Assembly: GCA_950097015.1 (NCBI GenBank)
Contig: CATNEN010000033.1
Span: forward strand, 620,001 to 684,000
Reading direction: 5' to 3'
DNA from: Macrostomum hystrix
Taxonomy: Eukaryota > Animalia > Platyhelminthes
DNA length: 64,000 nucleotides
Within the stretch, counting starts at the first letter, position 1, and every line of letters begins with the position of its first letter. Position numbers and translations under genes: made by a program. Below are positions 19,449-63,954 of the stretch, in pieces. The notes under the pieces are model-generated. The model was given only the letters and a program-made list of their open reading frames with translations. It was not told the origin of the DNA and ran no database searches.

Positions 19449-19487
<39 letters not shown>

Positions 19488-31269: not shown

Positions 31270-31585
31270 CATATATAGTATTTTCGCGAAAATACTGATA
31301 TGCTCTATAAACAAAGGTAAGGGCAGTATTTTTGCAAAAGTTCTTGAAGTAGTGTGCATGGCTACATCTTATGGTATTTTCGCGAAAATACTGCTATGCT
31401 ATTAAACAAAGGTAGTTGGCGGTATTTTTGCAAAAGTTCTTAAAGTAGTGTGCATGATTACATCTTTGGTATTTTCGCGAAAAGACTGCTATGCTATTAA
31501 ACAAAGGTAGTTGACGGTATTTTTGCGAAAATTCTTAATGTAGTGTGCATGGCTACATCTTATGGTATTATCGCGAATGCAGATA
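31270..31585. repeat. Palindromic array (3 full units plus 1 degenerate) upstream of Z1
   Basis: Same ~97-bp unit. Confidence 0.9.
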
Positions 31586-31876: not shown

Positions 31877-32282
31877 TTACTGCTCAATTCGATATCGGCG
31901 GCTCCGGAGCAACTCTCGCAGTCTAGCCCTTTGCTGTACGCCGCGCCAGTAGTCCAGGCCGTGTAGAATGTGCTGCAGCTCCAAACATGTGTCCTCCAGC
32001 AGGCCTAGCAGCTCGGCCAAGTCGAAGGCCTCGTTCTCTGTTAGGCAGGTCACCTCAAGGATGGTCTCGTAGCCCGCAGCTGTCTTGTGTTGTAGCAGCC
32101 AGTCCAGGAGGCTCTTCATCAGGGTGTGCAGCTGGGTGACGTTCAGCTAAGCAGTCGGGCAGTGGCGCTGCAGGCAGGTTAGCTGCTCCAATCGTCCTCG
32201 GTAAGTCAGGAACGGGGCCAGACAGGCGATGTCGCATCTGGCCAGGAGTGCCACGGTGGCCGGCGAGCCGAACAGCGCCACA
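31877..32282 (-). pseudogene. S1b copy, 5'-truncated, with internal TAG
   Basis: Matches 49964..50383; GAG>TAG at 32147-32149. Confidence 0.8.
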
Positions 32283-32284
32283 AG

Positions 32285-32440
32285 GTTCTTAAAGTAGTGT
32301 GCATGGCTACATCTTATGATATTTTCGCGAAAATACTGCTATGCTATTACCGTAAACAAAGGTAGTTAGCTGTATTTTTGCAAAAGTTATTAAAGTAAGT
32401 AGTGTGCATGGCTACATATTATGGTATTTTCGCGAACGTA
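32285..32440. repeat. Short palindromic array
   Basis: Two CGCG and two TGCA cores. Confidence 0.8.
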
Positions 32441-32835: not shown

Positions 32836-35800
32836 TCAGATGTCCAGTCTAGTTCTCGAACTGATCAGGCGCCCAGATCGCGTCCTGTATTCCGTTCGAC
32901 GAACCATGAGTAGCTCAGAATCCGAGCTGGTCTCATTGTCATTGCTGACGTGCTGTTGTTCACCATCATCACCTTCTTCGTCGATATCGTCGTGAACGTT
33001 GCCTTGTCCAGCCGATGCTCCAAACATCGGCGGTTGACTAAGACTGCGTCGTCTAGACGATGTAGACGAAATAGGCGATGGTGTTGCTGAATCGATGGCC
33101 GGCTTTGTCGACTCGGTGTTGTCCGTTGTTGAACATCTAGGACTAACCGTAGCGGGTCGCATTGTCGACATTCGAGGTCGCTTCTTGTCAGTGGCCTTGC
33201 AAATGGACGACCGTCGAGTGCGTCGCTTGCGTGTGCGTTGACTATGTGGCATCACAATGTCATCAGCAGGTAGAGGAGATGCAGCCGATGAATTGGTTGC
33301 GTCCAGATCAACGCTACAGGCGGCAGAGCGACGACGATTCGTGTCGTTTTCGGCTGTTGGATGTCGTTGATGTCGACGATCAAGTGGCCGATTGTGACAG
33401 AATGTCTCGAAGCATCCTCTGACGTCGTCGGCGACCATCAGATTGGCCTGCTGTTTGGCCAGGCGTCCATACGCATTGACGACACAGTTGCGCGATGTGT
33501 CGTACAGTGGCACCAGCTGGTCTAGCTTGTCGGGATGCGCATGCACATATGCCGACAGTACATTTCGACGACCATCGCCCATGCGATAGGGCCGATCGAT
33601 GACCAACTCGGCGCCCTGCTTGACAAGCGTGCTGAAACTTGTCGAGTCACGCTGCTTGCCACGATGCGTAGGAAACAGCAGACATTTGCCTGGCCTGACA
33701 TGGATGTTGCACTCGGCGAAGTATGGCAATAGAAAGTTGTCTATCCATTGCAGTAGACATTCGCCGACTTTGCGTGGCGCAGTCCAGCTTGCACCTTTAC
33801 CACGACCGCCCTTTTTGTGTGCCACTTCGGTAGGCGGCAGGACTGTGACAATGGTGGAGGACGTTGATACGCCGCTATTGAGTGCAGCATCCAAATAGCA
33901 ACGCCGAATCGCGACCCATGGACGTAGTCGATTGGCATGGACAATTGCTGCACAGAAGAAGGCCAGTTCACGCGTGATCGGCATAATAAATGTATTCCAT
34001 TTGCCGACGACGTTGGCCATTCGACGTGCACATTGTCCAATGCGACCCCAGTAGCCCTTCACGGGTAGATGAGACCACGAATGTTTGGCGACCATATCAA
34101 TCAGGCAGTCTAGCCGGTTGTGAATGATGCGCCATTCGTCAGCGGTCAGGAACTTATCCGTGTAGGACAGCTGGCGTTCGTCATCGCGCAGGTGATAAAT
34201 ATTCTCTTGCCGTTGACGAATCAATCCAATGCAAGCCTGTACATGTTAAAGGGTTATGAAAGAGAAAGTACATGCAGTAGCTTCTACAATTGTTCGTGAT
34301 ATATCAACTAACATAGTATACAATATGCGACACAACAACACTGCTCACCATGATTGATTCGATGCGGCTAGTCAACAGACCAGATACTGCAGTCTGATGA
34401 TAGAGAATACCATCTTTGCGCGGGTCAGGACAGGCAGGCAATTCTGACGCGGCCTTGACAATGTCGGCATGCACGTTGGCAAACAATCCATCTGGTGGCG
34501 AGGTCAATTGGAACGCGTTCATAACACTAGGAGCACCGAAGTCGTTGTTGGCTGCTAGAAACTTCTTCGCGCCGCTCAATATGTTATGAAGCTCGTTCAT
34601 TCGCTGTCCAACAGTCGATGGTTTCCAGATATGGCGCTTCACCATCTCGTCCAAATCGAATTGGATGCGCGCTGGATTGATGAACCACATCTCGACTGTG
34701 ACATTGATTGCGTGTAGGAGACGACTAGTTGTAGCATGATAGTTCCGCTGGATTGCTTTCCTACGGCTAACATGCGATGCGTTCTCTTCTACACAGCAAT
34801 GACCCTTGAACCAGATGTCGCCGACATTGTCTAGTTGCTTGTACATGTGTTCAGATGCAACGTGGTAGTCTGGGCCGTCGAAAACAACAAGCCGAGACGT
34901 CTTGTGCCTCCGTTGCAATACAAGCTCCTCTTCACTGACAGAAGCATCAGTATTTTCCACGTCAGATTTAGAGGTCTGAGTCTCTGCTTGTCGCTGACTG
35001 ACAGCATTGGTGACTCCGACCGGAACATAGTCTGACGTATACTGGAGAATTGCTTCTGTCAGATTGACCAGATTCTGCAAGCTAGTACACACGCGCGGAT
35101 GCTCAGCGTTGTGGGCTTTCTGCAGAATCTCGTTGAGGCCGGCCGCATTCAGACGCAGTCCATTGATAAACTCTGTTTGACAGGAAAGTTATAAATATTT
35201 GTTGATTATTTTTTATGTCTTTACGTGTAAATTAAAAAATGTAAAGGCATGTACAACAATATTTTAGACCACTTACTGATCGCTGCCACATTGTCGTTGA
35301 CATTAATGAACTCCGGCATCGTACTCGTTTCGTTTTGCAGTCGCTCGATGTCGTGACTGACAATATCGGCCGTGAACGAAGATGGTCCGGCCCGATCGAA
35401 ACTCGCCAACACCGGTGCTACTGACAGTGAGCATTGATCTGACTGAGAAGTAGCTTTGGACTGTCCTGCAGAAGACGATCCCGCAGAAGACGCTAACACG
35501 ACAATAGGCAGCTCAATGTTTGCACCCGCGTCTATCAAATCAGACGAAGAGTCGTCGCTGTCACTTGACGAACGGGTTGCATTTGCTACCTCTGTAATTG
35601 CCGGTTTACGCTTGCATGACCTGGCAATGTGTTTAGTGAGATGCCGAACACCTTTGCCACAGTATTGACAATAAGGCGAATCTGGATTGGATCCATCCCG
35701 ACGTAACCGGATGATATTCCATACAGTTTTCGCCTTAATGTGATACGATGCAGTCGCTGCGGGTCGTCCAACCTCCGGAATTGTGCTCCAATCAAAACTC

Positions 35801-35886
35801 GAAACGAAGTCTGAATGATTTGTAATAAAGTGCCTTACAACATTCTTCTTCCGAATTGAAGCTTTGCAGACTGGGCACGTATCCAT
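32836..35886 (-). CDS. Zinc-finger plus tyrosine-recombinase-like protein (944 aa; exons 35886-35277, 35172-34349, 34236-32836)
   Basis: Introns 35173..35276 (GTAAGT..CAG, phase 1) and 34237..34348 (GTGAGC..CAG, phase 0) join three ORFs in frame; WKPSTV, ANRLRP, HKK, LLFP, DGRR, DTS...NAY motifs in YR order. Confidence 0.7.
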
Positions 35887-36490
35887 TTCGCTGGTTATTG
35901 TTTGATGCTGTTCCAAAGTGCTTATGACAGAAGAACGTTTACACAGATTTGTAAGCGAGCGCGCTCGGCTTCTGACTTAAGCTGCTATCGTGACCCGTAC
36001 GACAGTTTAATCACATAAACTATCATTCAAGGTTTGTCTATGGCGAAAAAGCATAATATTGAACTCATAATATATTTAACGTTGCTATATTGTCTACTCA
36101 TAGTAGAGTAGGTAGTTTCGAACAGCAGATGAACATAAACACGAATAATTAATTGATTTCTGATTTATGTCAACAATTTTAATCTGTATGTTGAGAAAGC
36201 ACTTAAATTATTGTTGATTATTCCAGAGGTATTTTCGCAAAAGTACATATGTATTCTCAAACGAAGGTCCATGTAGTCTTTTTGCGAAAATACTTTAGTG
36301 TCAATCAATATGACTACTGTTTCTGATGGTATTTTCGAAAAAAAACATGTGTCCTAAACGAAAGTAAAGGCATTATCAAAAGAAGGTAACAACCGTATTT
36401 GAGCAAAAGTACGTTCATAATAATAATAAATATTTATTTTCATAAGTAGTAAATTATTAGCTGATTTTATTTATTTATAAAAATGTGTAT

Positions 36491-36562
36491 TAGTGACTGG
36501 GATTCGAACCCGAGCCACTGGTATCGTAAAAGAATGCTTGTGACCTGCACGCCAGATCACTA
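36491..36562 (-). ncRNA. tRNA-like putative Pol III gene, copy A (72 nt)
   Basis: TATAAATA at -33..-26, TGGCGTGCAGG A-box-like motif, GGTTCGAATCC B box, 7-bp terminal stem TAGTGAT/GTCACTA, T5 downstream; no canonical anticodon arm. Confidence 0.55.
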
Positions 36563-36761
36563 GCAATTGAATAGTGTGTTATCTGGCTATTTATATTGAT
36601 TTTCTTTCGGATGTTGGATAATGTAACGGAATGATAAGATTTATTGAGAGAATATAGATAATACTGCTGATATTGCTATCGCGAAAATTATTCAAATGTA
36701 GTACCGTTGTTCATACAGGGCTAGGTATTTTCGCGAAAGTACATTTTCGCGTTATACTTTT

Positions 36762-38623: not shown

Positions 38624-39043
38624 CTACTGCTCCATTTGATATTGGCGACTCCGGAGCAACTCTCGCAGTCTAGCCCTTTGCTGCACGCCGCACCAGTAGT
38701 CCAGGCTGTGCAGAATGTGCTGCAGCTCCGAGCAGGAGTCCTCCAGCAGGCCTAGCAGCTTGGCCAAGTCGAATGCCTCGTTCTCTGTTAGGCAGGTCAC
38801 CTCCAGGATGGTCTCGTAGCCCGCAGCTGTCTGGTGTTGTAGCAGCCAATCCAGGAGGCTCTTCAGCAGGGTGTGCAGTTGGGTGGCGTTCAGCTAAGCA
38901 GTCGGGCAGTGGCGCTGCAGGCAGTTTAGCTGCTCCAATCGTCCTCGGTGCGCCAGGAACGGGGCCAGACAGGCGATGTCGCATCTGGCCAGGAGTGCCA
39001 CGGTGGCAGGCGAGCCGAACAGCACCACAGGATGCGCATTCAT
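38624..39043 (-). pseudogene. S1b copy with internal TAG
   Basis: 420 nt, colinear with 49964..50383; TAG at 38894-38896. Confidence 0.85.
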
Positions 39044-40357
39044 CGTGGTTCTACGCAACCAATAATGTCGTGAGTGCAACAGTAGTGCGTCTAACACTAG
39101 CAGAAGTAAAAAATTTTTCGAGAAAAAAACATATGTTCTTAAACGAAGGAAACGGCAGTATTTTTGCAAAAGTTCTTGAAGTAGCGTGCATGGCTACATC
39201 TTATGGTGTTTTCGCAAATGCAGATACGTATTCTCAGACAAAGTAACTTGTACTTTTTTACCATAGACACATTTAGTATTTCTGCAAATTGCCAAGATTC
39301 ATGCATGTATTCTTTTCGCGAAAAGAAAATATGTTCTAAATTAAATACTTATAAATGAAAAAAAGTGTCAGTTTTTGCGAAAATACTAACGATAATATGA
39401 AGACTATATTTTTCGCGAAAACGCTCATATGTTCTCAAAATGAAGGTAACGGCAGTCTTTTTGCACCATGCAGTACTCAAAGAAATTGATTATTATTAGT
39501 TCCACATTATCTTTGCGAAAATTTAAGTATTCTAAAACGAATACGAAATGCTTTATAGGTGCGAAAGTACTTTGAGTATTCATGATGACTATTTGTAATG
39601 GAAATCAAATATCAAATATGACTTACTTGAACTATTCACATATTTATTTTCTTATTATTTAATGTTTTCCTGTTCTTTATTAGGTGTTCATTATTTCAGA
39701 GGTATTTTTGCGAAAGTACATACACATTCTCAAACGAAGGTTAAGGTAGTCTTTTTGCGAAAATATTTTATTAGTGTTAATATGATTACTGCTTCTGATG
39801 GTATTTTCGCGAAAAGACATGTGTCCCATATGTGTATTTTCGCGAAAACACAGATGTATTTGAAACGATGGTCATACACTGCCGTACTTATGCAAAATTA
39901 CCTGTAAGACAAGAAACTTAGATCAAGCATAATCAAGCAACCTTAAAAGAGTATATTCACAAAACTGCTGATTAATATTGTGTTGCTTTATTATTCACGT
40001 CAGACGCTAGAAATTGCAACAGGTTCACTGCCATGCATATTTGCTTTGCATGATTATCTGGCGCATACCTGCGGCTTTTAAGAAAACGAGAATAGTTTAA
40101 TAGTAATACCAGATGTTAATCAAATTATTTTATAATCTGTTAATTAATTTATTTACAAACGAAATAATCACAGTGTTGACAATCATTAGCATCTTAACAA
40201 TATATAAGAGAGCAACAAACAGAACATATGAGATTCTCGGTTGTCAAGGGACGGGTATTAGTGGGGGTATCACAATTGACACAATTGATAATAGTTTGGC
40301 AAATCAGACAATCAGCACATATTAAGTCAGGTGACACGACTGGGACAATATGAGCAT

Positions 40358-45847: not shown

Positions 45848-46228
45848 TCATTGTTCGATGTACCAGTAGCGAACTCCATGTATGATGAGCTGGAGTTCAG
45901 CTTGGGCGTCCTCAAAAAGCTCTAGCACTTCGATGATGTCTTGTGCTTCATCCTCTCTTATACCAGTCACGAACAAGACAGCCATATAGTCTTCTGCTGA
46001 CCGGTGCTGTTGCAGCCATTCTTGAGTGCGCCGTAATAATAAGCATAACTCATTAGCGCTATACTCAGCATTTGGAACACCGCGCTGCAAACTAGGTAGC
46101 TGCTCGAAGCACCCTCGATGCGCTATGAACCGGCCAATGCAATCTATGCGACAGCTGAGAAAGAGTTGAAATATGTGCGGGTGAAGATACATTTGCACTA
46201 ACTGCATCTGATGGGCAATGAACGACAT
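45848..46228 (-). CDS. S1 protein copy
   Basis: Intact 126 aa. Confidence 0.75.
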   Translation of the reverse strand: MSFIAHQMQLVQMYLHPHIFQLFLSCRIDCIGRFIAHRGCFEQLPSLQRGVPNAEYSANELCLLLRRTQEWLQQHRSAEDYMAVLFVTGIREDEAQDIIEVLELFEDAQAELQLIIHGVRYWYIEQ

Positions 46229-48465: not shown

Positions 48466-49700
48466 TCAATTGCCGCACAGACATTGTCGCGTCTTGATCA
48501 ATCGGCCGTGTCTTGACACTGTCGTAGTCAATATATTGTGTGTGCATATACAATACGAGCGTCTAGATGCATGCAAAGCATCAGTCGCAGGTATAGTCGA
48601 TTGCGATGACTGCACATCACTTATTGACATTGCGACATCGTCGTCAAGGTCGGCGGTCAGAACCAATTCTGCTGCGGCATCGGCATCTCCTTGCGGCACT
48701 GTCACATCAGATAGCTGTTCATCAGAATCGTTGTTGACATCAGCAATGATGATCTCCATTGCGACATCAAACATGTCATCGATGTGACTTGCTTCGGAAT
48801 GGGCAGCGAAATCCGATCCAGCAGCAGCAGCAACACAATCCGTATTGGTAGACAGAAATTGCATAGCGGCAGGTTGCATCAAGTCGAGCAGAATCTGCGC
48901 CATTTCAATGTCATCACCGTGACCGGATGATGTACCAATACACACTGACTGCGTGCTGACATTGGCTTCGATTGAAACATCGGTCACACCGTTTTGTGCA
49001 CTGACACCAACTGTCGCTGTTGTTACTCTTGGCGCACAGACAGGAATAAAAACAGGTAGCGGCACCGGAACGAAATACGGCACCTCGACAGTTGGAATCG
49101 GCAACATAGGCATCGCTGGTGATCCGATTGGCTCAATTTGCAAAATTGGCATTGATGGCGATGGTACTGGCGAGTGATCCGATTGGATTGTTTCTGCTGC
49201 TGCTTCAATCGCATTGTGATTAAGCGGAGTATATGTACAAATTGGATGCCGTACTGATCCAATTGACACGCTGTCCGCTTGGCTCACATGTTCAGCAGGC
49301 TCGTCAGTACTTGTTGCATAGATGATGCCTGATTCAGCTGCGCTATCTTCTATGATGATAGTTTCTGCTGGCTGCTCTGCTGCTGACTGCTCTGCTGATG
49401 GCTGCTCTGCTGCTGGCTGCTCTGCTGCTGGCTGCTCTGCTACTGGCTGCTCTGCTGCTGGCTGCTCTGCTACTGGCTGCTCTGCTGATGGCAGTCGACG
49501 GGCAATGTAGCGCTCGTGCATATAGTCGACAATCTCGCCGACCACAGCTGGTAGTGGATTCAGTTGTTCAAGCTGGACCACTTCGCCCATTGCCGCTGCT
49601 CCCGCCACTGCCACTGGCTGAGCTGATTGGCCACCGACGCGACGCTGCGGATTCCGCTTACATCTATATTGATGATGCAACATGTTGGACGTTATTTTGT
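48466..49700 (-). pseudogene. Z1 copy lacking its N-terminal zinc finger
   Basis: Similarity to 29599..31077 stops near 49700. Confidence 0.8.
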
Positions 49701-49963
49701 TTCAAATGGCGCAGTTGTGACAGCAGCGGAATGCAGTTCGAACATTCTATGAAATGAGTTTCATGCAGGGTATTATCTTACGTTACATGATGACTGCAGC
49801 CCCATGCCACTGCTGCACCTGAGTTAGGGACCCATTTCGCACTGTGATGATCGATCGAAATTTTTCCAATATACTGCGGGATATATAGTGACTATAGCGG
49901 TATTAGCTAGTGTTAGACGCGTTGCTGCTGCACGTACGACATTGTTGGGTGCGTAGAACCACG

Positions 49964-50383
49964 ATGAATGCTCATCCTGTGGCGCTGTTCGGCTCGCCGG
50001 CCATCGTGGCACTCCTGGCCAGATGCGACATCGCCTGCCTGGCCCCGTTCCTGGCGCACCGAGGACGACTGGAGCAGCTGACCTGCCTGCAGCGCCACTG
50101 CCCGAATGCTGAGCTGAATGCCACCCAGCTACACACCTTGCTGAAGAGCCTCCTGGACTGGCTGCTACAACACCAGACAGCTGCGGGCTACGAGACCATC
50201 CTGGAGGTGACCTGCCTAACAGAGAACGAGGCTTTCGACTTGGCCGAGCTGCTAGGCCTGCTGGAGGACACCTGTTCGGAGCTGCAGCACATTCTACACG
50301 GGCTGGACTACTGGCGCGGCGTGCAGCAAAGGGCAAGACTGCGAGTGTTGCTCCAGAGTCGCGAATATCGAATGGAGCAGTAG
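49964..50383 (+). CDS. S1b protein (139 aa), intact paralog of S1
   Basis: FLAHRGRLEQL...LQHILHGLDYW aligns with S1 FIAHRGCFEQL...LQLIIHGVRYW. Confidence 0.75.
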   Translation: MNAHPVALFGSPAIVALLARCDIACLAPFLAHRGRLEQLTCLQRHCPNAELNATQLHTLLKSLLDWLLQHQTAAGYETILEVTCLTENEAFDLAELLGLLEDTCSELQHILHGLDYWRGVQQRARLRVLLQSREYRMEQ

Positions 50384-51030: not shown

Positions 51031-53928
51031 ATGTCGTTCAATTTTTCTACCGGCTGCGACAGCGACGATGAACGAATTGCGGCCGCGCTGGACGAGTTTG
51101 AGAGAGCTGCCCAAGATAGCAACTCCGCCGGGCCGGTAGCGTCATCAACTCACCAGCCACCATCACAGCGAAAAAGAAAGAGCGCTCCCTCTCAACGTCG
51201 CATTGTCAATGCAGCGGCAGCAGCAGCAGCTGCAGAATCTACGCCAGGCCCAAAGCGGTGCTGCCGTCCAGTGCAGACAGCAGCGGTGGCTAACATCAGC
51301 AGTGACGCCGACGACTTCAGCCTGCTGCCCCTGAGCGGTGTCATGCGCCTGAACACTGAAGAGCAGCAGCCTGCCAATGACCAGATGTCCACAGCATCAG
51401 GCAGTGTGGACCTGCTGAACGCGTCGATTGTGTCCATCCGCGTCGTATCCCAGCCAGCGGCAGCAGGCAATCAGCAGCCGCCACCACCTGCTAGTACGTC
51501 GGCAAATAACACGACCGTCTACGCACCAATCTCCCACGCGATGGCAGCCTCAGCCTCGACTGCGCCAAAAGGGAGCCTGCTGGCTTGGCTCGGTGATCAG
51601 CACCGGAGTGCCAAGAAGGCCACCAGCAGATGGTCGTCGCCGGCAGTGATCAGGCACGTCGGGCGACAGGCTGCTGGCAAAAGTGACGACAGCGACGGTG
51701 CGGCGTCTGACGCGCCCGACAGGTCCAGTGCAGCCCTACAGCCTCGCAGCCCCGTCGTCATCGAGATTGAGGATGTCGACGACGAGCGCCACGATATAGG
51801 CAGAACGACAGCGGCAACTCGCAGTAGCGGCCCAAAGGCGGAGCCATCGGAGCCTAACGAGCAGGAGGCGGCGATGGATAGCGACGACCGCGATGCTCTG
51901 CAGGCACTGCTGGACTACGAGGCGTCCACCGTTGCGCTGTCAGTCGCTGTAGATCCCCCACCGTCGGGCGCTGATGCGGAAATGGAGGAGGTCGCCAGCA
52001 CGGTGCCGAAACCGCCTCAAGTCGCGGCCGACCAACAACAGCAGCCAGGGAGGCGGAGGTTCCGTTTTCAGCGGCTCGAAACGACTGCTCCTGCTGGCTG
52101 TTGCTGCTGCTGCCGACTGCTCCATTGTGGGCGCCATGGTGCCAGACTCGCAGTCCGATGGCCGACGACTTGCAGTCGCCAAGACCACACCGTCTCAGCG
52201 TCCGGAAGATGAGACGACGGCCTACGTGGTGTCGCCTGGCACAGCGGCATTCGCAGCAGCGGTGGTGGCCGCTATGAATGAGGCCAGCCAGTCCGTCCCT
52301 GTCGGCCAGGAGTGGTGGCGCATAATGACACCGCAGCCGCTGCAGCAACAAGAGCAGGTGCAGCTCGAGCGTCCTCCCTCGCTGATGGCATTCAGCTACA
52401 GTCCGCCGGCGTCTGCGGCACAGTATATGCAGTATATGCAGCAACAGCAGGGGGACAGCGAGGCAAGCAGGAGCGCGGTCGGCGGCGCCAGAGGACAACG
52501 AGGCGGCCGAGGCGTGCGACGGCTGGGCCAAAACCCGCTGCTTAATGCGGCAGCAGCACAGCAGCAGTTCACGGTGACGCGCTCCGTCAGCCGACCGCTC
52601 GCAATGACCGGTGCTGCTCCTGCGGAGCGACTGCCAGAGGACAGCGGGATTCTGACCGGCGCCGCTATTTGCACGTCTTCCACATCGACAACGTGCGCTT
52701 CGTCGGTGAGTCACTTGCTTTGTTCTTAAGCTTTGAATCATATAACCAGCTGGCATCCACTGTTTCCATGCTGCCTACATAAACAGGTCGTGCCAAGGTA
52801 TATCTGGGCGAGGCTCTGGAGGCACACTGTGTCGAGCTCGTCCTGGCGTCCAGCCCGGGCCTCTGCGTCGGCATGGATGAATTCTGCGACCGGCGGCTAG
52901 TCGCTGACCCGCTCTCCGTCGACGAGATGGAGCAACAGCAGCAGCAGCAGCAGCATAGCGAGTATCGGCCACACCGCACTCTGTCCGGCTTCGTGCGCCT
53001 GGAGACCAACGCGGCCAGCTGGCATCTTTACGAGCTGCTGTTCAGCCTGCTGCCTAGCCGAGACGAGGGACGCTGCTTTGTGGTGCCCGACCGGACCACC
53101 CTGACGCTGTGCGGCGTCCGCTCGCCAGACAGTGTGCTGCGGAGCCTGACGCAGCACGACGGCTACCCGCTGCTGATCGGGATCGGCGCCACGCAGTGCA
53201 GCATGCTGGTGCAAGCGACTCGGTGGGCGCTGTCCTACCCGCTGACTGCCAACCTGCCCGACCAGACTGACGGCTTCTTGTTGGCCCACCAGCAGATGCG
53301 CGCCACGTTGCTGGGCGTTTTCAGAGATGTGCAGCGCCAGCGCCGGATTCGCAGGGAGCAGCTCGCCGGCTGTTCCGCATGCTCCACCGAGGCTGCCGAC
53401 AACAGGAACCTGTGCCCGCTCCGAGAGGCCGTCTGCATAGCCCTTCGCCACCAGTCGGGCGTTGTCTATCTGTATGGGCCGTCGGGAGTCGGCAAGACCA
53501 CCGCCGTCGAGCGCCACTTGGGCCAGGAGCGCGTATTCTGCCCGGTCATTAAGCGCTTCGGCGGTAATGACTTCATGTTCGACGGCCTGGACACCGCGCG
53601 CCACTCAGTCATCTTTCTGGACGAGGTGCGGCCGCACATGTTCGAGGGCGGCGACCTGGAGACCACGCTGTTGCGCCTGCTGAACGGCAACAGCTTCCTG
53701 GTCAACGCTAAGCACCAGGCGCATGTCTACCTGGACTGGGGCCAACGGCTGGTAATCATGGCCGGCCACGCCTCACCTGACGACTTCCCGGCTGACGTGC
53801 AGCGGCGCCTGCGCAACGAGGGCAACACATGCGTCGAGGTCGACCACGACATCGAGGCCTGCCAGGGGGGGTGCCGCCAGCAGCCGATGTTCGGAGCCGC
53901 CGCCGCCGCCAACGCCCAAGTTGAATAA
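51031..53928 (+). CDS. Rep-like/SF3 helicase paralog 2 (two apparent frameshifts; intron 52706..52786)
   Basis: GPSGVGKT, VIFLDE, RLLNGNSFLVNAK, VIMAGH, VQRRL; colinear with paralog 1; frameshifts near 52050-52150 and 52657 are lesions or assembly errors. Confidence 0.8.
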
Positions 53929-55795: not shown

Positions 55796-56164
55796 AGTTT
55801 ATACGTATAGACCGATTGGGCAAGCAGCATCGGCTGCCTGAATCACATATCCGTACATATATGTGATGGATGTCGATTCGAAAACTGACTTGGCTGTGAA
55901 TAGACTCAAATGCTGGTATTTTCGCGAAAAGTGTATTTATTTTCGCAAAAATACTGATATGTTTCCAAAACAAAGGTAAGGGTAGTATTTTTGCAAAACG
56001 TTCCTGAACTACTCTCTATATTCGCTGAATAAAAATTATCAGTCTGTTAGAAAAAAAATTGTATTAGTGGTCAAGATTTCACCATTTGCAGACAAACGTC
56101 ATTAAAACTCGAACATGCGAAAGAAAATAAATATAAATAGCCAGATAACACACTATTTGATTGT

Positions 56165-56236
56165 TAGTGATCTGGCGTGCAGGTCTAAGGCATTTCTCTC
56201 TAATACCAGTGGCTCGGGTTCGAATCCCGGTCAGCC
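56165..56236 (+). ncRNA. tRNA-like putative Pol III gene, copy B
   Basis: TATAAATA at 56132, GGTCTAAGGC (tRNA-Leu-like D loop), GGGTTCGAATCCC, T6 at 56243. Confidence 0.5.
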
Positions 56237-56433
56237 TTACGCTTTTTTGTTATTAAAAAAACAGCTAACATTTTACTATCAATGAAAATAAATCTTTACT
56301 AGAAATCTATTTTTTTATATTCGAATCCCCACTATTTGTGGATCCCCATTATTATTAACGTACTTTTGCTCGAATACGCCAGTTAAGAAAAGAAAAGCAA
56401 TATAAATAGCCAGACAACACACACTTTAATTGT

Positions 56434-56504
56434 TAGTGAACTGGCATGCAGGTCTAATGCATTGTCGCTAGTACAAGTGGCTCGGGTTCGAATCCCATTC
56501 ACCC
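56434..56504 (+). ncRNA. tRNA-like putative Pol III gene, copy C
   Basis: TATAAATA at 56401, same A/B boxes, T7 at 56511. Confidence 0.5.
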
Positions 56505-56984
56505 AACGCATTTTTTTATTTAAAAAAATGGGCAATATTATACTAGAAATGAAAAAATATTTTTACTAGGAATCTGTTTTTTTATATTGGAATCCACACT
56601 TTTTGTGTGGATCCCCATTATTATTAATGTTTACTTACTACTGCAATATTACTTATAGTAGGGCCGATTGCACCTGAAGTAGTAAAGTATACTGCGAAAG
56701 TAATTGAATTAACATGGCTAGTCTATATACTTGTAATGGCTTTTTCGCGAAATAGCCATAGAAATTTTATCTATTAGTATTTGCGAATTGGGGATTGCAA
56801 TACACACGAGTGAATTTTCGCGAAAAAAAAGTTTTGTCTGTAGTCAAACCTAGAACTACAGTTGAGTACAGTCGCAAAAGTGACCTATGTAAGACTGAGC
56901 GCGCTTAACATCTACTTTGTGACCGACTGACTGACCGACCGAGTAATTACGAGTTAATTCCTACGCCTCGACTTGAATTTTGAA

Positions 56985-59700
56985 ATGTCAGCATTTCGTG
57001 GCTGTGGAAAGAAGGCTCGTGTGGATGCCAGCATTGCTACACCGGATGCTAATGGTCTACGCCAGACTATGATCGTGGATTACTTTAGATCTCAGCAGTC
57101 AACCGATCGTCCTACTGGCGCAGCATCTAGACCGAGTGTGCAAGCATCATCGGCATCATTTACAGCAATGGCAGGAACGGCTGGTCGGGCATCGGCTGCC
57201 TTCACTGTTCCCCGCCTTGCAGTAATACAGCAGCAGCAGCAGTCGAAACAGCAGCAGCAGCAGCAGCAGCCGAAGCAGCAGCAGCCGAAGCAGACTGTCC
57301 CATCGAGTGCAATTCGGAAGCGTCGATATGCCCGATCGACTCTACGCAAGCGGACGCGTACAGTTGTCGATTTGGATGCTTCGTCTAGCAATTCATCGTC
57401 GTCTGATGCTGAAGACACTGGCGTTGGATCTCTAGTAGCCATGCGACAGCCTCTGGTTATTGTTGCCCAACCAATTTGTGGCGCCGGCGACCATGCTGAT
57501 CGCATAGAGTCCACGCCTAAAGTGCTATCATCTGAAGATGACTCAGCGGACGACTTGCTAGCAGACGACGTACAGCTGGAGATTGTGGACGAGTGGACGA
57601 GCAATACAGACAATGTAGAGTCTAATACTGCCCCTGTTTTGACGGCCTCTAATAGTTCAGCCTTGTCATCGCAGCTAGTCGATGATAAGTACAAAACAGA
57701 GGTGGCAGAATTATTGCGCGTTAATGGCGAGTCGACTATTCCTAAAAATAGTGCCGCACTTGGTGCCTGTCCGACTTCGCCAGATTATGCGCCTCGCTCT
57801 ACACCGGCAATGTCTGTCATCGAGAATGGGACAACATCCGATGCTGATGAACCAGTTCGCGCTGTATTCTCTCCAGCGTATGTCGACGCTTCTCAACCAA
57901 AAGCGCAACAGTCGGGACGACTGCAGCAATCGCAGCAGCAGCAGCAGCATCAACAGCGAGAGCAACAACCGCAGCAACAGCCGCAGCAGCAGCAGTGGCG
58001 GCAGCCGCTGCGGCAGCAGATACAAGGGCGTGAACGGCAGCAGCAAGAAGTTGGTGGCGTGGCATTTGCTCCGATAGCCGATGAATATGCGTTGTGTCGT
58101 TCGACATCACCACTTCTACGGCTATGTCCTCGAGCTCCAATTACCGACTACGCCTCTTTAACAGCAGAGGGCAGGTCGGTTCTTATGACTAGAAGGACGC
58201 TACATCTTATAGAGATTGCATTCATCTCGAGCGATGTGGAAAAATTCAAGGCGTTTCTAGAAGATGAATTGGTAGCTCCATGTGCACAGTTTGCCATCGG
58301 CGCAACATCATGTATTCAGGTTGACATGCTGACCAGCGAAGAAATCCGAGCGCGTCGTCAGCAGAAATACAACATGTCAATCCGTGAATGTTTAGGAGCT
58401 CCGAATCATCCCAATGGTTTGCTGATGTTCCTGAACCTGCGCCAACCAGAAGATGGTTACACTGTTTACTGCGGACTGCATGCCCTTTTGATGGAATCTG
58501 CGGAAGCTTCGGCGTACCTGCATCCTACAATGTGTAGAATGACAGTGTCTGGTGTACGCAGTGCGTCAAGTGCAATTAAGCTAGTTACCAGTACGGACGA
58601 GTTTCCAGCTCTTTTCCGCGTTTCTACTCAAGAGTGCAGCTTGCTGACCAAGGCCTTTTGCTGGGTTGCTGCTCATGAGACGTCATCTACTGAGCCTTTG
58701 CTAGATAGTGGCTTCATGTTCGAACACTTTCGTGTCAGACAAGAGCTCAGCGATTACTTTAAGGTGACTCAGATGAAACGCGTAATAGCAACAGAGGTGC
58801 TAGCTGGTTGCCAAAACTGTCGCCCTACTGCCGCTGCCGCCGCCGCCGCTGCTGATGATGCTGCAACAGCCGACTATGCGAGGACGACCTTGCCTACTCA
58901 GCTGGAGGTATGCAAAATATTATAATACATGACATTTTTTAGCACACGTACGAGTATTGATCATTGAATTTTTGCTGTTGTTTTAATTCAAATAATTATT
59001 ACTTTTGGACAATTAATTAATTAATTGTATGCGAACCTACCTAACAACACAACAGGTCTCTGCTGCTGCTGCTGATGTTGCTGCTTCCGCTGCTACTGCT
59101 GTTCAAGTATTTGATGCCGCCGTCGCTCATGTTCCCCGGTTGATCGCCGCCGCCACCAACGTGTGCCCAACTGTAAAGGCTGTGTGCAGCGCGTTGCAAT
59201 TGCCAACTGGTGTCGTCTATCTATACGGCCCGTCTGGCGTTGGGAAGACCCACTCTGTGCAAAGCCATCTCGGTTCTACGAAAGTGCTGAATATCCAGGT
59301 GCAGAAGCGGTCTAACACGTTTATGTTTGACAAGCTCTGCGAGACTATACACACTGCCATGTTTATTGACGAGCTACGCCCGCAACTGTTTGATGACACA
59401 TCTGAAGTCATGTGCACACTACTTCGTTTGGTCAATGGAGACACTTTTGAAGTCAATGCTAAATACAAGGCTATTCGACACGTCTCTTGGCTCAATCGAC
59501 TGTTAGTGCTTGCTGGGCATGCTCCGGTCAGTGCGTATTCGATGGACTTTCAGCGCCGATTAGAACCGACACCTGATGGGCACAAGTGTCCGGTAGTTGC
59601 CATCTTCATTGGTCATTCCCTCAGTGCCGACTACCAATGCGATGGACAATGCCACCCAATACGCAATGTGTTTGGCGATCACCCGGACCGGCGAGTATGA
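56985..59700 (+). CDS. Rep-like/SF3 helicase paralog 1, intact (855 aa; exons 56985..58907 and 59056..59700)
   Basis: 148-nt GT-AG phase-0 intron; Walker A GPSGVGKT, Walker B MFIDE, B-prime RLVNGDTFEVNAK, motif C LVLAGH, Arg finger FQRRL. Confidence 0.85.
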
Positions 59701-60079
59701 GCGACAAGACGGTGCTGTTAGCAGGTTTTTTTACACCAAACTGCCTGCATGCTGCTATTTTATCGACTATATTTTTACTCGGTCCTTCAGTCAGTCTTTC
59801 AGCTGTTTTTTTTATATTTTTTACTGTTTCATTCTGTTTTTGTATGCAATTTTATAATTAGTCATACAAATAAAATCAATTTATATGCTCAGTTTTGAGC
59901 TTTTATTGTTGTGAAGTAGGTAATTGCTACTTCTGTTGCAAAAAAAATCATATTTCTTATTACTATATATAGTATTACGCATTCAAACGAAGGTATATGC
60001 AAAGTGTCAAAGTATTAATTAATAAAATTCATTTACAGGTGTTATCGCGAAAATAAAATAACGACTTTTATCCGAAAGT

Positions 60080-60865
60080 AAATAGCGGTATTTTTGCAAA
60101 AGTTATTAAAGTCGTGTGAATGGCTACATCTTAAGGTATTTTCGCGAAAAGACTGCTATCCTATTAAACGCAGGTAGTAAAGGTAGTTTGCGGCTGTGAC
60201 CTGGAAAAGTTATTAAAGTAGTGCGCATGGCTACATCTTAAGGTATTTTCGCGAAAAGACTGCTATGCTATTAAACAAAGGTAGTTGGCGGTATTTTTGC
60301 AAAAGTTATTAAAGTATGTTATATGCGTGGCTATATGTTAAGGTATTTTCGCGAAAATACTGCTATGCTATTAAACGCAGGTAGTAAAGGTAGTTTGCGG
60401 TATTTTTGCAAAAGTTATTAAAGTAGTGTGCATGGCTACATCTTAAGGTATTTTCGCGAAAATACTGCTATGCTATTAAACAAAGGTAGTTGGCGGTATT
60501 TTTGCATAAGTTATTAATGTAGGTTATATGCGTGGCTATATCTTATGGTATTTTCGCGAAAAGACTGCTATGCTATTAAACAAAGGTAGTTGGCGGTATT
60601 TTTGCAAAAGTTATTAAAGTAGGTTATATGCGTGGCTATATCTTAAGGTATTTTCGCGAAAATACTGCTATGCTATTAAACAAAGGTAGTTGGCGGTATT
60701 TTTGCAAAAGTTATTAATGTAGGTTATATGCGTGGCTATATCTTATGGTATTTTCGCGAAAATACTGCTATGCTATTAAACAAAGGTAGTTGGCGGTATT
60801 TTTGCAAAAGTTCTTGAAGTTGTGTGCGTGGCTATATCTTAAGGTATTTTCGCGAAAATACATGC
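60080..60865. repeat. Palindromic ~100-bp tandem array
   Basis: 8 TTTTCGCGAAAA cores counted. Confidence 0.95.
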
Positions 60866-61304
60866 ATATTATTAGACTAAGTATATTGTACTTTTTTAAC
60901 CATAGACATATTTAGTATTTCTGCAAATTGCCAAGAGTCATGAGTGCATTTTTTTCGCGAAAAGACTATATATTATCTATATATTGTATTGAATACCTGT
61001 GAATGAAAAATAATGACAGTTTTTTTGCAAAAATACTAACGATACGATGATGAACATATTTTTGCGAAAGAACATGTTCTAAAACAAATACAAACTGCGA
61101 AATTGCTTTGAGTACTAACATACAAACAATAATGCTTAACATAGTGCTGATGATTGTTGGTGATGGTATTTTCGCGAAAAGATTAGTGTATTTTCAATCA
61201 TTTACAACACAACACATATGTAGATATCAAATAGTATTGATAATCAGAAGCTTTATAATATCACTGTAATTAATCATAGTGAATGTATTTTTTATAATAT
61301 CATT

Positions 61305-62078
61305 TCAAACTTGTGCCTCCTCAATTGCAATCGCTACTGCTGCTGACGCTTCCGCCTCTTCAGCTGCGGCATACAATAGGCAGTCGTCAGCTGGGTCAAA
61401 TGTACAGCTACTGGCTGTCATCGCTGCTGCTGACGCCTCTGCCTCTTCAGCTGCGGCATACAATAGGCAGTCGTCAGCTGGATCAAATAAACAGCTACTG
61501 GCTGCCATCGCTGCCGCTGCTGCTGACGCCTCTGCCTCTTCAGCCGCGGCATACAATAGGCAGTCGTCAGCTGGGTCAAATAAGCAGCTACTGGCTGCCA
61601 TCGCTGCCGCTGCTGCTGACGCCTCTGCCTCTTCAGCTGCGGCATACAAAAGCTCGTCATCAGCTGGGTCAAATAAGCAGCTACTGGCTGCCATCGCTGC
61701 CGCTGCTGCTGACGCCTCCGCCTCTTCAGCTGCTGCATACAAAAGCTCGTCATCAGCTGGGTCAAATAAACAGCTACTGGCTGCCATCGCTGCCGCTGCT
61801 GCTGACGCCTCCGCCTCTTCAGCTGCTGCATACAAAAGCTCGTCATCAGCTGGGTCAAAGCAATTGGCTGCCATCGCCGCTTCGACCTCTTCAGCTACGG
61901 CGTATAACAAATGGTCGTCTGCCAGGCCGAATACAAAACTGTATGTTGAATTGTATGTTTCATCATACCCGTAGTCATCATAGCCTGGCTCTTCATTCAG
62001 CTCAACGTCATCGTCGTGACAGTTGGATTTTTCCGCATCGTTTAGAGTTGGCCCTGATGATGATGTTGATGTAGGCAT
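61305..62078 (-). CDS. Acidic repeat protein AR (257 aa; six 31-aa units)
   Basis: Same N-terminus as 24799..25638, different repeat count. Confidence 0.75.
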   Translation of the reverse strand: MPTSTSSSGPTLNDAEKSNCHDDDVELNEEPGYDDYGYDETYNSTYSFVFGLADDHLLYAVAEEVEAAMAANCFDPADDELLYAAAEEAEASAAAAAMAASSCLFDPADDELLYAAAEEAEASAAAAAMAASSCLFDPADDELLYAAAEEAEASAAAAAMAASSCLFDPADDCLLYAAAEEAEASAAAAAMAASSCLFDPADDCLLYAAAEEAEASAAAMTASSCTFDPADDCLLYAAAEEAEASAAVAIAIEEAQV

Positions 62079-62313
62079 GGCGAGACAATGGGGGCAGTAT
62101 TTAAAATGTTGAACTTGTTTTATTTACTTCATTAATTGTCCAAAGTTTCAACTGCATTGATTACATATTCCCAATCACATAAGATTATCAGCAAGCTTGT
62201 TACCATAGACTAGCAATAGGGTTTTTAGTTGGTTACTTTACTAAGGTAAGTGGCGTAACTTATTTACACATTTTAGATTCTTAATTATTGTTTCAAATAA
62301 AAAAAACTACAAC

Positions 62314-62772
62314 ATGTCATCACTGGGTGGGCGGCACAATGGCGGAGATCGAGATCGAGATATCGACAGAGAGGATCACAACTCTGGCAACGACAAACCG
62401 ATCTCGTGCCCTACCGTCAGTAGCAGCACAGATGTCGTGATTGGCACTGAGCGACGTCGACGAAGGCACAGCTCGGATAGTAGTTCAGACTCGGATTTTG
62501 CTATTCTGCTTTCACGTCAACGTGTTCAGTACGTATTGCATCGTCCAGGTGTCGTGCGCATTTACAATCAGAGATTTGGAATTGTGAACGCCAATCCGAC
62601 ACGTGATTTAGCCGGCCAATTGCAACTGCCGCAGCATGCGCAAGTGACCGATATACAGTCACCAATTATAAGCAGCAGCAGCAGCAACAGTAACAATGGC
62701 GGCACTGGCACTGAAAGAGAGCGCGGCGATGCCAATCGTGCTGCAAATAACCCAGATTTGAATGACATGTAG
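62314..62772 (+). CDS. S3 protein copy
   Basis: Near-identical to 25873..26331. Confidence 0.65.
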   Translation: MSSLGGRHNGGDRDRDIDREDHNSGNDKPISCPTVSSSTDVVIGTERRRRRHSSDSSSDSDFAILLSRQRVQYVLHRPGVVRIYNQRFGIVNANPTRDLAGQLQLPQHAQVTDIQSPIISSSSSNSNNGGTGTERERGDANRAANNPDLNDM

Positions 62773-63285
62773 CAATTGTTTTGTTAAGCACTGTTGCCAT
62801 TGCTTATAATGAAATTAATTAACTGATTAATATAATTAGAAGTTTCATGTATTTGATTCATACATCAGAGTATTTAAAATCGACAGTTCATGATGCCTGC
62901 AAATGTTTTAAAGTACTTTTATATACACTAGCTCTCGTTCACCTTCACGTGGTATATTCAAAGCATAAGAGTTTGCCGTCACTATTGACAATATATTGTC
63001 GCGTTTACCATTAATCATAATCAGACGACTGATGAGATCAGTCAGTAATAAAATATTAATACGCGAACACAGATGTGTGCAGGTAGTCAACCGGTAATTA
63101 TTAATACGGTTTTTATTAAATTTCACCAATACATATAGAGTATAAATATATATAGAATTTCATTGGTTGAACAAATAATCGTGCCATTCTACAATTAGTC
63201 TGATTTGCAAAGTCGCGAGAGCAAAAATAAACGTGTAAACTATAATACATAAAATTCTGCATATAAATTCTGTATTTTACAGCAT

Positions 63286-63666
63286 TCATTGTTCGATGTA
63301 CCAATAGCGAACTCCATGTATGATGAGCTGAAGTTCAGCTTGGGCTTCCTCTAAAAGCTCTAGCACTTCGATGATGTCTTGTGCTTCATCGTCTCTTACA
63401 CCAGTCACGGACAAGACAGCCTGATAGTCTTCTGCTGACCGGTGCTTTTGCAGCCATTGTTGAGTGCGCCGTAATAATAAACATAGCTCATTAGCGTTGT
63501 ACTCTGCATTTGGAACACCGCGTTGCAAACTAGGTAGCTGCTCGAAGCACCCTCGATGCGCTATGAACCGGCCAATGCAATCTATGCGACAGCTGAGAAA
63601 GAGTTGAAATACGCGCGGCTGAAGATACATTTGTACTAACTGCATCTGATCGGCAATTAACGACAT
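63286..63666 (-). CDS. S1 protein copy
   Basis: Intact; 1 aa difference from 26842..27222. Confidence 0.75.
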   Translation of the reverse strand: MSLIADQMQLVQMYLQPRVFQLFLSCRIDCIGRFIAHRGCFEQLPSLQRGVPNAEYNANELCLLLRRTQQWLQKHRSAEDYQAVLSVTGVRDDEAQDIIEVLELLEEAQAELQLIIHGVRYWYIEQ

Positions 63667-63954
63667 GTTCAGTCAGTTAGTAAATCAAGTAAAGCAAAAA
63701 ATAGTTTTGTTAAAAAAAATTCTAAACTTTAATCGTTTAATAAGAAGCGATATACTAATATTAATATTAATGCGATAAGAAGCCCCCATAGAGTATAATT
63801 TATCGAACACAGGTGAGTCAGTCCAGAGACAAATCAAATGAATACAGGCCAGTCTGGGTATTAAGAACAAGAAATCTTTCTCGGCCAAGAAATCAGCCCA
63901 CAACCAACGCCATACGGACAGAAGCTACAGGATAGCGAGCGACACAGCACGGAC

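What the first reader, a model, noticed from the sequence alone, without database searches (positions are those of the whole stretch)
56985..59700. Helicase with the LT/E1 architecture: dead HUH-like domain, Cys cluster and SF3 motor with Asn>His motif C
Seen: Walker A, Walker B, an exact B-prime R-x3-G-x7-K, an Arg finger, and motif C as AGH in both paralogs. Upstream segments fall in Rep motif order (VFHIDN ~ motif I; HRTLSGFVRL ~ motif II; GVRS..S.....T ~ motif III) but lack the HUH histidine pair and the catalytic Tyr. A CxxC...C..C cluster precedes the ATPase. Established: polyomavirus LT and papillomavirus E1 are inactivated HUH origin-binding domains fused to SF3 helicases, and LT has a Zn domain there. 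Inference: an independent or related dsDNA initiator rather than a rolling-circle nickase.
Basis: partly seen in the sequence, partly recalled or inferred. Interest (0 to 1): 0.88.

Follow-up and report, generated by a model that had tools for sequence, protein, structure and literature searches.

The report
Nuclease-dead viral Rep gene in flatworm
A flatworm chromosome carries several copies of a gene descended from the replication protein of small circular DNA viruses; it keeps the fold of the DNA-cutting domain but has lost every cutting residue, keeps most of the helicase motor and has gained a cysteine cluster, which repeats the change that gave tumour-virus replication proteins such as large T antigen and E1.

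Summary
Window 56985-59700 is one two-exon gene (641 + 214 codons, 148-nt GT-AG intron). It has a second, broken copy at 19179-22877 and a GC-rich paralog at 51031-53928.

A profile of the family finds, among 1.84 billion proteins, about 14 genuine HUH + SF3 Rep proteins (E down to 6e-7). Profile-profile tests on each domain separately give:
- ATPase: 99.85 % (E 1e-30)
- linker: 97 %
- motif II-III half of the nuclease domain: 91 % (E 1e-6)

The middle domain models well (pLDDT 77.6). Its significant viral structure matches are CRESS-virus Reps wherever they are named.

Live relatives keep both HUH histidines, the Tyr and the Lys in 13 of 14 sequences. The flatworm clade has 0-1 of 5 and 0 of 10. 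Walker A, Walker B, the B-prime Lys and the Arg finger are kept. A four-Cys cluster is invariant in this clade.

- Two quoted motifs belong to the paralog, not to the stated interval.
- The intron was missed.
- The motif C Asn aligns with Gly, and the His sits one residue later.

Purifying selection (omega 0.08-0.18) argues against a dead fossil. The LT/E1-like architecture is supported and is probably convergent. The role as a dsDNA replication initiator is not shown: the gene is chromosomal, has introns, and has no viral neighbours.

The parts
56985..59700 (+). Paralog A, copy 2: the finding's gene, apparently intact (ATG to stop, two exons)
56985..58907 (+). Exon 1, 641 codons
   Evidence: It ends on a codon boundary at a GT donor.
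58908..59055 (+). Intron: 148 nt, GT-AG, phase 0, GC 26 %
   Evidence: Paralog B and relatives P0001, P0002, P0006 and P0009 run colinear across this point without interruption.
59056..59700 (+). Exon 2, 214 codons plus stop: second Cys pair, SF3 ATPase, C-terminal His/Cys motif
56985..58163 (+). N-terminal extension: low complexity, Gln-rich and acidic, with basic clusters at 57009-57023 and 57315-57359. No Pfam family.
57063..57086 (+). Match to the PCNA-interaction pattern Q-x2-[ILM]-x2-[FY][FY]
   Evidence: 6 matches in 128,000 six-frame residues of the window, so about 0.04 are expected in this protein. It is present in both A copies.
58164..58670 (+). HUH/Rep-fold domain without catalytic residues. 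Motif I, II and III equivalents at 58200-58223, 58416-58439 and 58572-58598.
   Evidence: AF2 pLDDT 77.6, pTM 0.70; Foldseek; hhalign 91 %; column counts
58710..58871 (+). Helical linker homologous to the segment between the nuclease and helicase domains of Reps (their oligomerisation region)
   Evidence: hhalign 97 %, E 9e-11; long helices in the model
58806..58820 (+). First Cys pair (C-x2-C)
   Evidence: Cys in 7 of 7 clade members at both columns; at most 2 of about 12 live Reps
59161..59187 (+). Second Cys pair (C-x6-C) just before the ATPase core
   Evidence: Cys in 8 of 8 clade members at both columns
59200..59600 (+). SF3-type ATPase core: Walker A 59227-59250, Walker B 59359-59373, B-prime 59425-59463, motif C region 59506-59520, Arg finger 59548-59562
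   Evidence: hhalign 99.85 %, E 1e-30 against live Rep helicase domains; counts
59611..59652 (+). C-terminal His ... Cys-x3-Cys motif
   Evidence: 6 of 6 clade members at each of the three columns; also seen in relatives P0035 and P0038
19179..22877 (+). Paralog A, copy 1: broken copy, 96-99 % identical to copy 2. It carries one internal tandem duplication of about 1 kb and one short frame-shifting insertion.
51031..53928 (+). Paralog B (GC 64-67 %). Its last exon, 52787-53928, holds most of the dead nuclease domain, the Cys cluster and the ATPase in one frame. Its N-terminal part needs two frame changes relative to the continuous ORF of the Macrostomum lignano relative.
52706..52786 (+). Intron of paralog B: 81 nt, GT-AG, phase 1, at the same position in the M. 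lignano locus L001
60085..60881 (.). 100-bp tandem array, about 385 bp downstream of the gene, with one TTTCGCGAAA palindrome per unit. The same array follows copy 1 (23331-24814).
56920..56946 (.). Left arm of a 27-nt inverted repeat (85 %) that brackets the gene. The right arm is at 59775-59801.
   Evidence: It may be chance.

Best explanation
The finding is one member of a multi-copy gene family in the genome of a Macrostomum-type flatworm. The family descends from a CRESS-DNA-virus-type replication protein made of an HUH endonuclease, an oligomerisation linker and an SF3 helicase.

Shown:
- The three parts are homologous to, and colinear with, those of live Reps.
- The nuclease fold is kept, but the two metal-binding His, the nucleophilic Tyr and the neighbouring Lys are replaced throughout the clade.
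- Walker A, Walker B, the B-prime Lys and the Arg finger are kept.
- The sensor-1 Asn is not kept.
- The clade has gained an invariant four-Cys cluster between linker and motor, a C-terminal His/Cys motif, a long disordered N-terminal extension, and introns at different places in the two paralogs.
- The protein-coding sequence has evolved under purifying selection.

Inferred:
- The protein cannot nick DNA or start rolling-circle replication.
- It most likely assembles through its linker and ATPase into a ring.
- It most likely uses the dead nuclease domain, perhaps with a zinc site formed by the Cys cluster, as a DNA-binding module. In that case it acts as an ATP-dependent DNA-binding or DNA-remodelling protein.

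This is the same functional shift as in large T antigen and E1, reached independently. Whether it serves the host or a resident selfish element is open.
For: Origin of the window:
- The best hits are M. lignano proteins (P0001 69 % identity, P0004 45 %).
- The window also holds a gag-protease ORF and a Tc1-like transposase.

Homology:
- The profile search found 41 hits, including about 14 full Reps, with E down to 5.9e-7.
- Those Reps reach the Pfam cut-offs for Gemini_AL1 (P0027, P0029) and DUF5906 (P0015, P0017, P0030).
- hhalign on independently realigned segments gave 99.85 %, 97 % and 91 %.

Fold:
- The model has pLDDT 77.6 and pTM 0.70.
- In BFVD there are 19 matches at E <= 1e-3, and every named one is a Rep.
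- PDB matches include pMV158 RepB, the E1 DNA-binding domain (probability 1.00, TM 0.55-0.57) and circovirus Rep domains (TM 0.59-0.64).

Residue counts:
- Live Reps keep the two His, the Tyr and the Lys in 13 of 14 sequences each, and the motif C Asn in 14 of 14.
- The flatworm clade has the first His in 0 of 5, the second in 1 of 5, the Tyr in 0 of 10 and the Lys in 0 of 10.

Selection: paralog B against L001 gives pN 0.20, pS 0.61-0.74 and omega 0.08-0.18.

Introns.

Clade: the split between dead and live sequences is present in an NJ tree of the ATPase columns, with bootstrap 193 of 300.
Against: - The first half of the nuclease domain (motifs I-II) is not significant by sequence alone.
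- PDB fold matches have E-values above 1e-3 and are mixed with generic ferredoxin-like proteins.
- The sensor-1 Asn is Gly here and varies within the clade, so ATP hydrolysis may be weak or lost.
- Copy 1 and the N-terminal part of paralog B are broken, and the two A copies differ at omega 0.72 in exon 1. Some members are therefore decaying.
- No expression data were available.
- The monophyly bootstrap is only moderate.
- The species is inferred from best hits only; no exact match to the window was found.
Confidence: 0.75

Rival explanations
1. The protein is the replication initiator of a double-stranded DNA virus or episome-like element that is integrated here. It would work like large T antigen or E1: the dead HUH domain binds an origin and the SF3 ring unwinds it.
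For: - The architecture matches.
- A Cys cluster sits where LT has its zinc domain.
- Arrays of a 100-bp unit carrying a perfect 10-bp palindrome lie directly downstream of both A copies, and single copies of the palindrome lie just upstream. There are 39 copies against 0.1 expected.
- A 27-nt inverted repeat brackets the gene.
- The gene is multi-copy.
Against: - No capsid, polymerase or other viral hallmark was found in neighbouring ORFs.
- Introns lie at different positions in the two paralogs, and one is shared with another locus.
- The copies are parts of larger segmental duplications interspersed with transposons.
- The palindrome arrays also occur away from these genes and are absent from the M. 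lignano paralog locus.
- The sensor-1 Asn is missing.
- There is no sequence kinship to LT or E1.
Confidence: 0.1
2. These are decaying fossils of an integrated CRESS-type virus. The loss of catalytic residues would simply be pseudogene drift, and no protein function would remain.
For: - Copy 1 carries two lesions.
- Paralog B needs two frame changes in its N-terminal part.
- The M. lignano relative needs one frame change, and another relative is interrupted by a transposase gene.
- Omega is 0.72 between the A copies.
- Rep-derived insertions are common in invertebrate genomes (PMC6069186).
Against: - Omega is 0.08-0.18 between deeply diverged members.
- The same catalytic positions are replaced in all clade members, while the ATPase motifs and new Cys positions are invariant.
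- Copy 2 has 855 uninterrupted codons across a clean splice.
Confidence: 0.1
3. It is an ordinary cellular AAA+ ATPase with an unrelated N-terminal domain, and the Rep-like motif order is chance.
For: - The finding's own protein gives only sub-threshold P-loop matches in Pfam and the PDB.
- The first low-confidence model matched both AAA+ and SF3 structures.
Against: - The profile finds complete Reps with colinear matches over both domains.
- hhalign gives E 1e-30 for the motor and E 1e-6 for the nuclease part.
- The Rep fold is recovered.
Confidence: 0.03

Closest known systems
Rep proteins of CRESS-DNA viruses (Cressdnaviricota): HUH endonuclease + SF3 helicase
   Same: - Same three-part order and homologous throughout.
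- Same nuclease fold.
- Same Walker A, Walker B, B-prime Lys and Arg finger.
   Different: - No HUH histidines, no catalytic Tyr or Lys, and no motif C Asn.
- An added four-Cys cluster, a C-terminal His/Cys motif and an N-terminal extension of about 395 residues.
- Chromosomal and spliced, with no capsid gene nearby.
[quoted passage not shown]
   Same: - A dead HUH-fold domain in front of an SF3 motor.
- The E1 DNA-binding domain is among the best PDB fold matches.
- A Cys cluster occupies the position of LT's zinc domain.
   Different: - No detectable sequence kinship.
- The nearest relatives are live CRESS-type Reps, so the inactivation is probably separate.
- No J domain.
- Not on a small circular dsDNA genome.
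- The sensor-1 Asn is absent.
Endogenous circovirus/CRESS Rep elements of invertebrate genomes, some intact and expressed (PMC6069186)
   Same: A virus-derived rep gene resident in an animal genome, with signs of purifying selection.
   Different: It shows clade-wide removal of the nuclease chemistry combined with new conserved features (Cys cluster, extension, introns) and amplification into paralogs. The paper I read does not describe this for those elements.

Membership tests
HUH + SF3 Rep (CRESS-type) | Nuclease domain with the HUH/Rep fold | tested here: met
   AF2 model pLDDT 77.6; BFVD matches to Reps at E 7e-5 to 1e-3; hhalign 91 % over the motif II-III half
HUH + SF3 Rep (CRESS-type) | Motif II: two His that hold the metal | tested here: not met
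   The columns hold Gly and Leu in the finding. The clade has 0 of 5 and 1 of 5, against 13 of 14 in live relatives.
HUH + SF3 Rep (CRESS-type) | Motif III: catalytic Tyr (and Lys) | tested here: not met
   Leu and Ser in the finding. The clade has 0 of 10 for each, against 13 of 14 in live relatives.
HUH + SF3 Rep (CRESS-type) | SF3 helicase domain with Walker A, Walker B, B-prime and motif C Asn | tested here: inconclusive
   Domain homology is firm (E 1e-30). Walker A, Walker B, the B-prime Lys and the Arg finger are present. The motif C Asn column holds Gly, with His at +1.
HUH + SF3 Rep (CRESS-type) | Encoded on a small circular genome together with a capsid gene | tested here: not met
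   The gene is chromosomal, spliced and segmentally duplicated, and no capsid-like neighbour was found.
LT/E1-type replication proteins (Papovaviricetes) | Inactivated HUH-fold DNA-binding domain N-terminal to an SF3 helicase | tested here: met
LT/E1-type replication proteins (Papovaviricetes) | Sequence membership in the LT or E1 helicase families | tested here: not met
   There is no such Pfam hit on the finding's protein and no PDB sequence hit. Only sub-threshold PPV_E1_C matches occur, on the live relatives.
LT/E1-type replication proteins (Papovaviricetes) | Zinc-binding domain between the origin-binding domain and the ATPase (LT) | tested here: inconclusive
   Four invariant Cys lie at that position. 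There is no structural or sequence match to a zinc domain, and the spacer between the two pairs varies from 7 to more than 30 residues.
LT/E1-type replication proteins (Papovaviricetes) | Binds and unwinds a cognate origin on a circular dsDNA genome | not testable with these tools
   Only circumstantial evidence exists: palindrome-bearing arrays next to the gene.
Endogenous viral element derived from rep | Virus-derived gene embedded in host chromosomal DNA | tested here: met
   It lies in a 64-kb context with transposons, satellites and introns. A relative lies on a 220-kb M. lignano contig beside ordinary genes.
Cellular AAA+ ATPases | Motor groups with a cellular AAA+ family rather than SF3 | tested here: not met
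   The nearest relatives are Rep helicases with SF3 Pfam matches.

The most novel reading that the evidence does not exclude
The clade marks a further, independent transition from a nicking Rep to a non-nicking initiator built like LT or E1. In this reading it still serves an undescribed flatworm dsDNA element. The palindrome-bearing 100-bp arrays next to the gene would be its binding sites, and the N-terminal PCNA-pattern would couple it to the host replication fork.
Probability: 0.1. Interest if true: 0.88.

Novelty: new variant of a known kind. Interest (0 to 1): 0.62.

Why it matters
The change from a DNA-nicking Rep to a non-nicking, origin-binding protein is the key step proposed for the origin of polyomavirus and papillomavirus replication proteins. 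So far it is known essentially from that one lineage.

This second lineage has closer sequence ties to live Reps. Its catalytic residues are removed cleanly, it has a newly gained Cys cluster at the equivalent position, and it shows evidence of selection. It therefore gives a natural comparison for how such a switch happens. It also shows that a virus-derived motor can persist as a spliced, amplified animal gene.

Tried and rejected
- Pfam, PHROGs and PDB sequence searches with the finding's own exons gave only P-loop noise.
- The word-indexed protein search found only two close relatives with paralog B. It found nothing with exon 1 and nothing new with the 29-sequence alignment.
- The first structure model, from 5 sequences, was poor (pLDDT 49). 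Its fold matches mix AAA+ and SF3 structures and are not used as evidence.
- My idea that the 462-aa neighbour at 32836-34224 is a tyrosine recombinase got no support.
- A suspected gene pair of the Rep-like gene with a small helical protein was rejected. That protein has 8 copies in the window, most of them away from the Rep-like genes, and none in L001.
- An exact look-up of paralog B found no record, so the source assembly was not identified.
- The first NJ script timed out and the second had a distance overflow. Only one search is used.
Full report
**What is at the coordinates**

The interval 56985-59700 runs from an ATG to a stop but is not one open frame.
- A 641-codon stretch ends at 58907 on a codon boundary, directly before GT.
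- A 148-nt AT-rich stretch (GC 26 % against 52 % in the flanks) ends in AG at 59055.
- A 214-codon stretch then follows in another frame.
- The paralog in the window and several relatives run colinear and uninterrupted across this point. I therefore read it as a phase-0 intron.

No result here depends on a joined sequence.

**Copies in the window**

A self-comparison shows a large segmental duplication: 19014-27258 matches 56829-63702 at 96-99 %. A translated search finds three loci of the family and no more.
- **Copy 2 of paralog A** is the finding and is apparently intact.
- **Copy 1 of paralog A** (19179-22877) carries one internal tandem duplication of about 1 kb and one short frame-shifting insertion.
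- **Paralog B** (51031-53928) is GC-rich. Its last exon (52787-53928) holds most of the middle domain, the Cys cluster and the ATPase in a single frame.
  - It is 43 % identical to exon 2 of A and 28 % identical to the end of exon 1.
  - It has an 81-nt GT-AG phase-1 intron at 52706-52786. The same intron occurs in a Macrostomum lignano locus.
  - Its N-terminal part needs two frame changes relative to the continuous ORF of that relative. These may be real breaks or assembly errors.

Walker A, Walker B, the R-x3-G-x7-K stretch, A-G-H, the R-R-L Arg finger and the Cys residues are all present in both paralogs. The two strings quoted for motifs I and II are in paralog B, not in the stated interval. 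The interval has its own equivalents at 58200-58223 and 58416-58439.

**Origin of the window**

- The closest database proteins are hypothetical proteins of the flatworm M. lignano (69 % identity to B, 45 % to exon 2 of A).
- One of them lies on a 220-kb contig beside ordinary genes.
- The window also holds a gag-protease ORF, a Tc1-like transposase and satellites.
- It is animal DNA and nothing suggests it is human. The species is inferred from best hits only, since no exact match was found.

**What the protein is related to**

The exons alone give only P-loop noise in Pfam, PHROGs and the PDB.

A profile of five family sequences was scored against 1.84 billion representatives. It found 41 proteins at E <= 1e-3.
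- The closest hits are further nuclease-dead members, from M. lignano and from short environmental contigs.
- From E 6e-7 onward come about 14 proteins of 300-570 residues, aligned over both the middle domain and the ATPase.
- These have textbook Rep motifs.
- They reach Pfam's cut-offs for the geminivirus Rep catalytic domain (P0027, P0029) and for DUF5906 (P0015, P0017, P0030). They also give sub-threshold matches to RNA_helicase, PPV_E1_C and Parvo_NS1.
- They come from contigs of 2.3-4.9 kb.

I did not fetch the DNA of those contigs.

**Domain-by-domain test**

I cut the joint alignment into segments, realigned each group independently and compared profiles.

| Segment | Probability | E-value |
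|---|---|---|
| ATPase | 99.85 % | 1e-30 |
| Linker | 97 % | 9e-11 |
| Nuclease part | 91 % | 1e-6 |
| Motifs I-II alone | not significant | 0.23 |

The nuclease match covers the stretch from motif II through motif III.

**Fold**

With a 28-sequence alignment, the last 276 residues of exon 1 model at pLDDT 77.6 and pTM 0.70. The model has alternating strands and helices followed by long helices.

Against predicted viral structures there are 19 matches at E <= 1e-3. Every named one is a Rep of Cressdnaviricota, Circoviridae, bacilladnaviruses or cruciviruses, with 200-280 aligned columns. An adomavirus EO1 and a papillomavirus E1 follow lower down.

Against the PDB no match reaches 1e-3. The list includes:
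- pMV158 RepB
- the E1 DNA-binding domain (probability 1.00, TM 0.55-0.57)
- circovirus Rep domains (TM 0.59-0.64)
- a smacovirus Rep domain

These are mixed with generic ferredoxin-like proteins.

**Residue counts**

| Position | Live relatives | Nuclease-dead clade |
|---|---|---|
| First HUH His | 13 of 14 | 0 of 5 |
| Second HUH His | 13 of 14 | 1 of 5 |
| Motif III Tyr | 13 of 14 | 0 of 10 |
| Motif III Lys | 13 of 14 | 0 of 10 |
| Motif C Asn | 14 of 14 | see below |
| B-prime Lys | 14 of 14 | 7 of 7 |

- The Walker A Lys, the Walker B Asp-Glu and the Arg finger are kept in the dead clade. The few exceptions are misaligned fragments.
- The motif C Asn column holds Gly in the finding and its closest kin. 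The His is one residue later, and other clade members have Ser, Ala or Asn there.
The loss of sensor 1 is a real caveat for ATPase activity.
- Two Cys pairs between linker and motor are Cys in 7 of 7 and 8 of 8 clade members, and rarely in live Reps.
- A C-terminal His/Cys/Cys motif is present in 6 of 6 clade members.
- One live-group protein (P0033) has also lost its His pair and its Tyr, so such losses recur.
- In an NJ tree of the ATPase columns the dead clade separates from the live Reps, with bootstrap 193 of 300.

**Is it a fossil?**

I compared paralog B with the M. lignano locus, using only stretches that are in one frame in both. This gives pN 0.20, pS 0.61-0.74 and omega 0.08-0.18. 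Synonymous sites are near saturation, so the value is rough, but constraint is clear.

The two A copies differ at omega 0.72 in exon 1. The differences lie in the N-terminal extension, and the middle domain is identical in the two copies.

Taken together with the invariant new Cys positions and the intact copy 2, this indicates a protein that has been kept for a function, while some copies decay.

**Mechanism**

- Shown: homology, fold, residue losses and gains, selection, and chromosomal, spliced context.
- Inferred: no nicking. Ring assembly through the linker and ATPase. DNA binding by the dead nuclease domain, possibly with a zinc site. ATP-dependent DNA binding or remodelling.

This is the LT/E1 solution as described in the literature (PMC6668415, PMC13595969). 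However, the nearest sequence relatives are live CRESS-type Reps and no kinship to LT or E1 was detected. I therefore read the inactivation as independent.

A role as initiator of a dsDNA replicon is not shown. No viral hallmark was found in neighbouring ORFs, and the introns indicate long residence in the host genome. Rep-derived insertions, some intact and expressed, are known in invertebrates (PMC6069186). The combination seen here is a new variant of that kind.

- I did not fetch the small Rep-bearing contigs.
- While reasoning I began to recall motif letters of animal-virus helicases and a short binding site from memory.
- My scripts printed piecewise match coordinates over broken copies, which indirectly show where frames change.

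Noticed in passing
window 60085-60881, 23331-24814, 16225-17141, 31274-31577; single sites at 56743 and 56816: A 100-bp satellite carries the perfect palindrome TTTCGCGAAA once per unit. There are 39 copies in the window against 0.1 expected. An array follows both A copies, and two single sites lie just upstream of copy 2. The palindrome is absent from the four fetched loci.
   Followed up: partly
window 57063-57086 (and the same place in copy 1): A match to the PCNA-interaction pattern Q-x2-I-x2-Y-F lies at residues 27-34, next to a basic cluster. About 0.04 matches are expected per protein of this size. It was not seen in paralog B.
   Followed up: partly
window 56920-56946 and 59775-59801; 19104-19130: A 27-nt inverted repeat (85 %) brackets the A gene 39 nt before the ATG and 75 nt after the stop. 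The left arm is also present before copy 1. It could be chance or could mark the ends of a small unit.
   Followed up: partly
window 63286-63666(-), 26842-27222(-), 45851-46228(-), 49910-50383(+), 38645-39076(-), 31931-32287(-) and two more: A family of small (about 125-155 aa) predicted helical proteins with no Pfam match has eight copies. Like the Rep-derived gene, it occurs as an AT-richer type and a GC-rich type, 45 % identical to each other.
   Followed up: partly
window 61337-61859 and 24809-25420: A 93-bp tandem repeat is open on both strands and gives Ala/Glu-rich and Pro/Leu-rich repeat ORFs of about 250-280 aa.
   Followed up: no
window 3073-4209(-), with 2791-2947 / 4284-4440: A Tc1/mariner-type transposase ORF (DDE_3 plus HTH domains) is flanked by 157-bp inverted repeats that are 98 % identical. 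It looks like a complete, young transposon.
   Followed up: no
window 9582-11339(-): A 585-aa ORF has retroviral-type aspartyl protease and weak Gag matches. It is part of an LTR retrotransposon.
   Followed up: no
window 29599-31077(-), 48466-49683(-), 35221-35916(-), 32836-35092(-): Repeated ORFs have paired Cys/His zinc-finger-like N-termini. A 462-aa ORF has no family match. My guess of a tyrosine recombinase found no support.
   Followed up: partly
window 56120-56627 and 36424-36618: A 269-bp repeat contains a tRNA-like segment and may be a SINE.
   Followed up: no
L004 733-1958: In an environmental contig, a nuclease-dead family member is followed directly by a Tc1-like transposase ORF where its ATPase part should be. 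That copy is therefore interrupted by a transposon.
   Followed up: no
protein P0033 (relative, not in the window): One protein grouping with the live Reps has also lost both HUH histidines and the Tyr while keeping the motif C Asn. This suggests that nuclease loss recurs in this Rep group.
   Followed up: no
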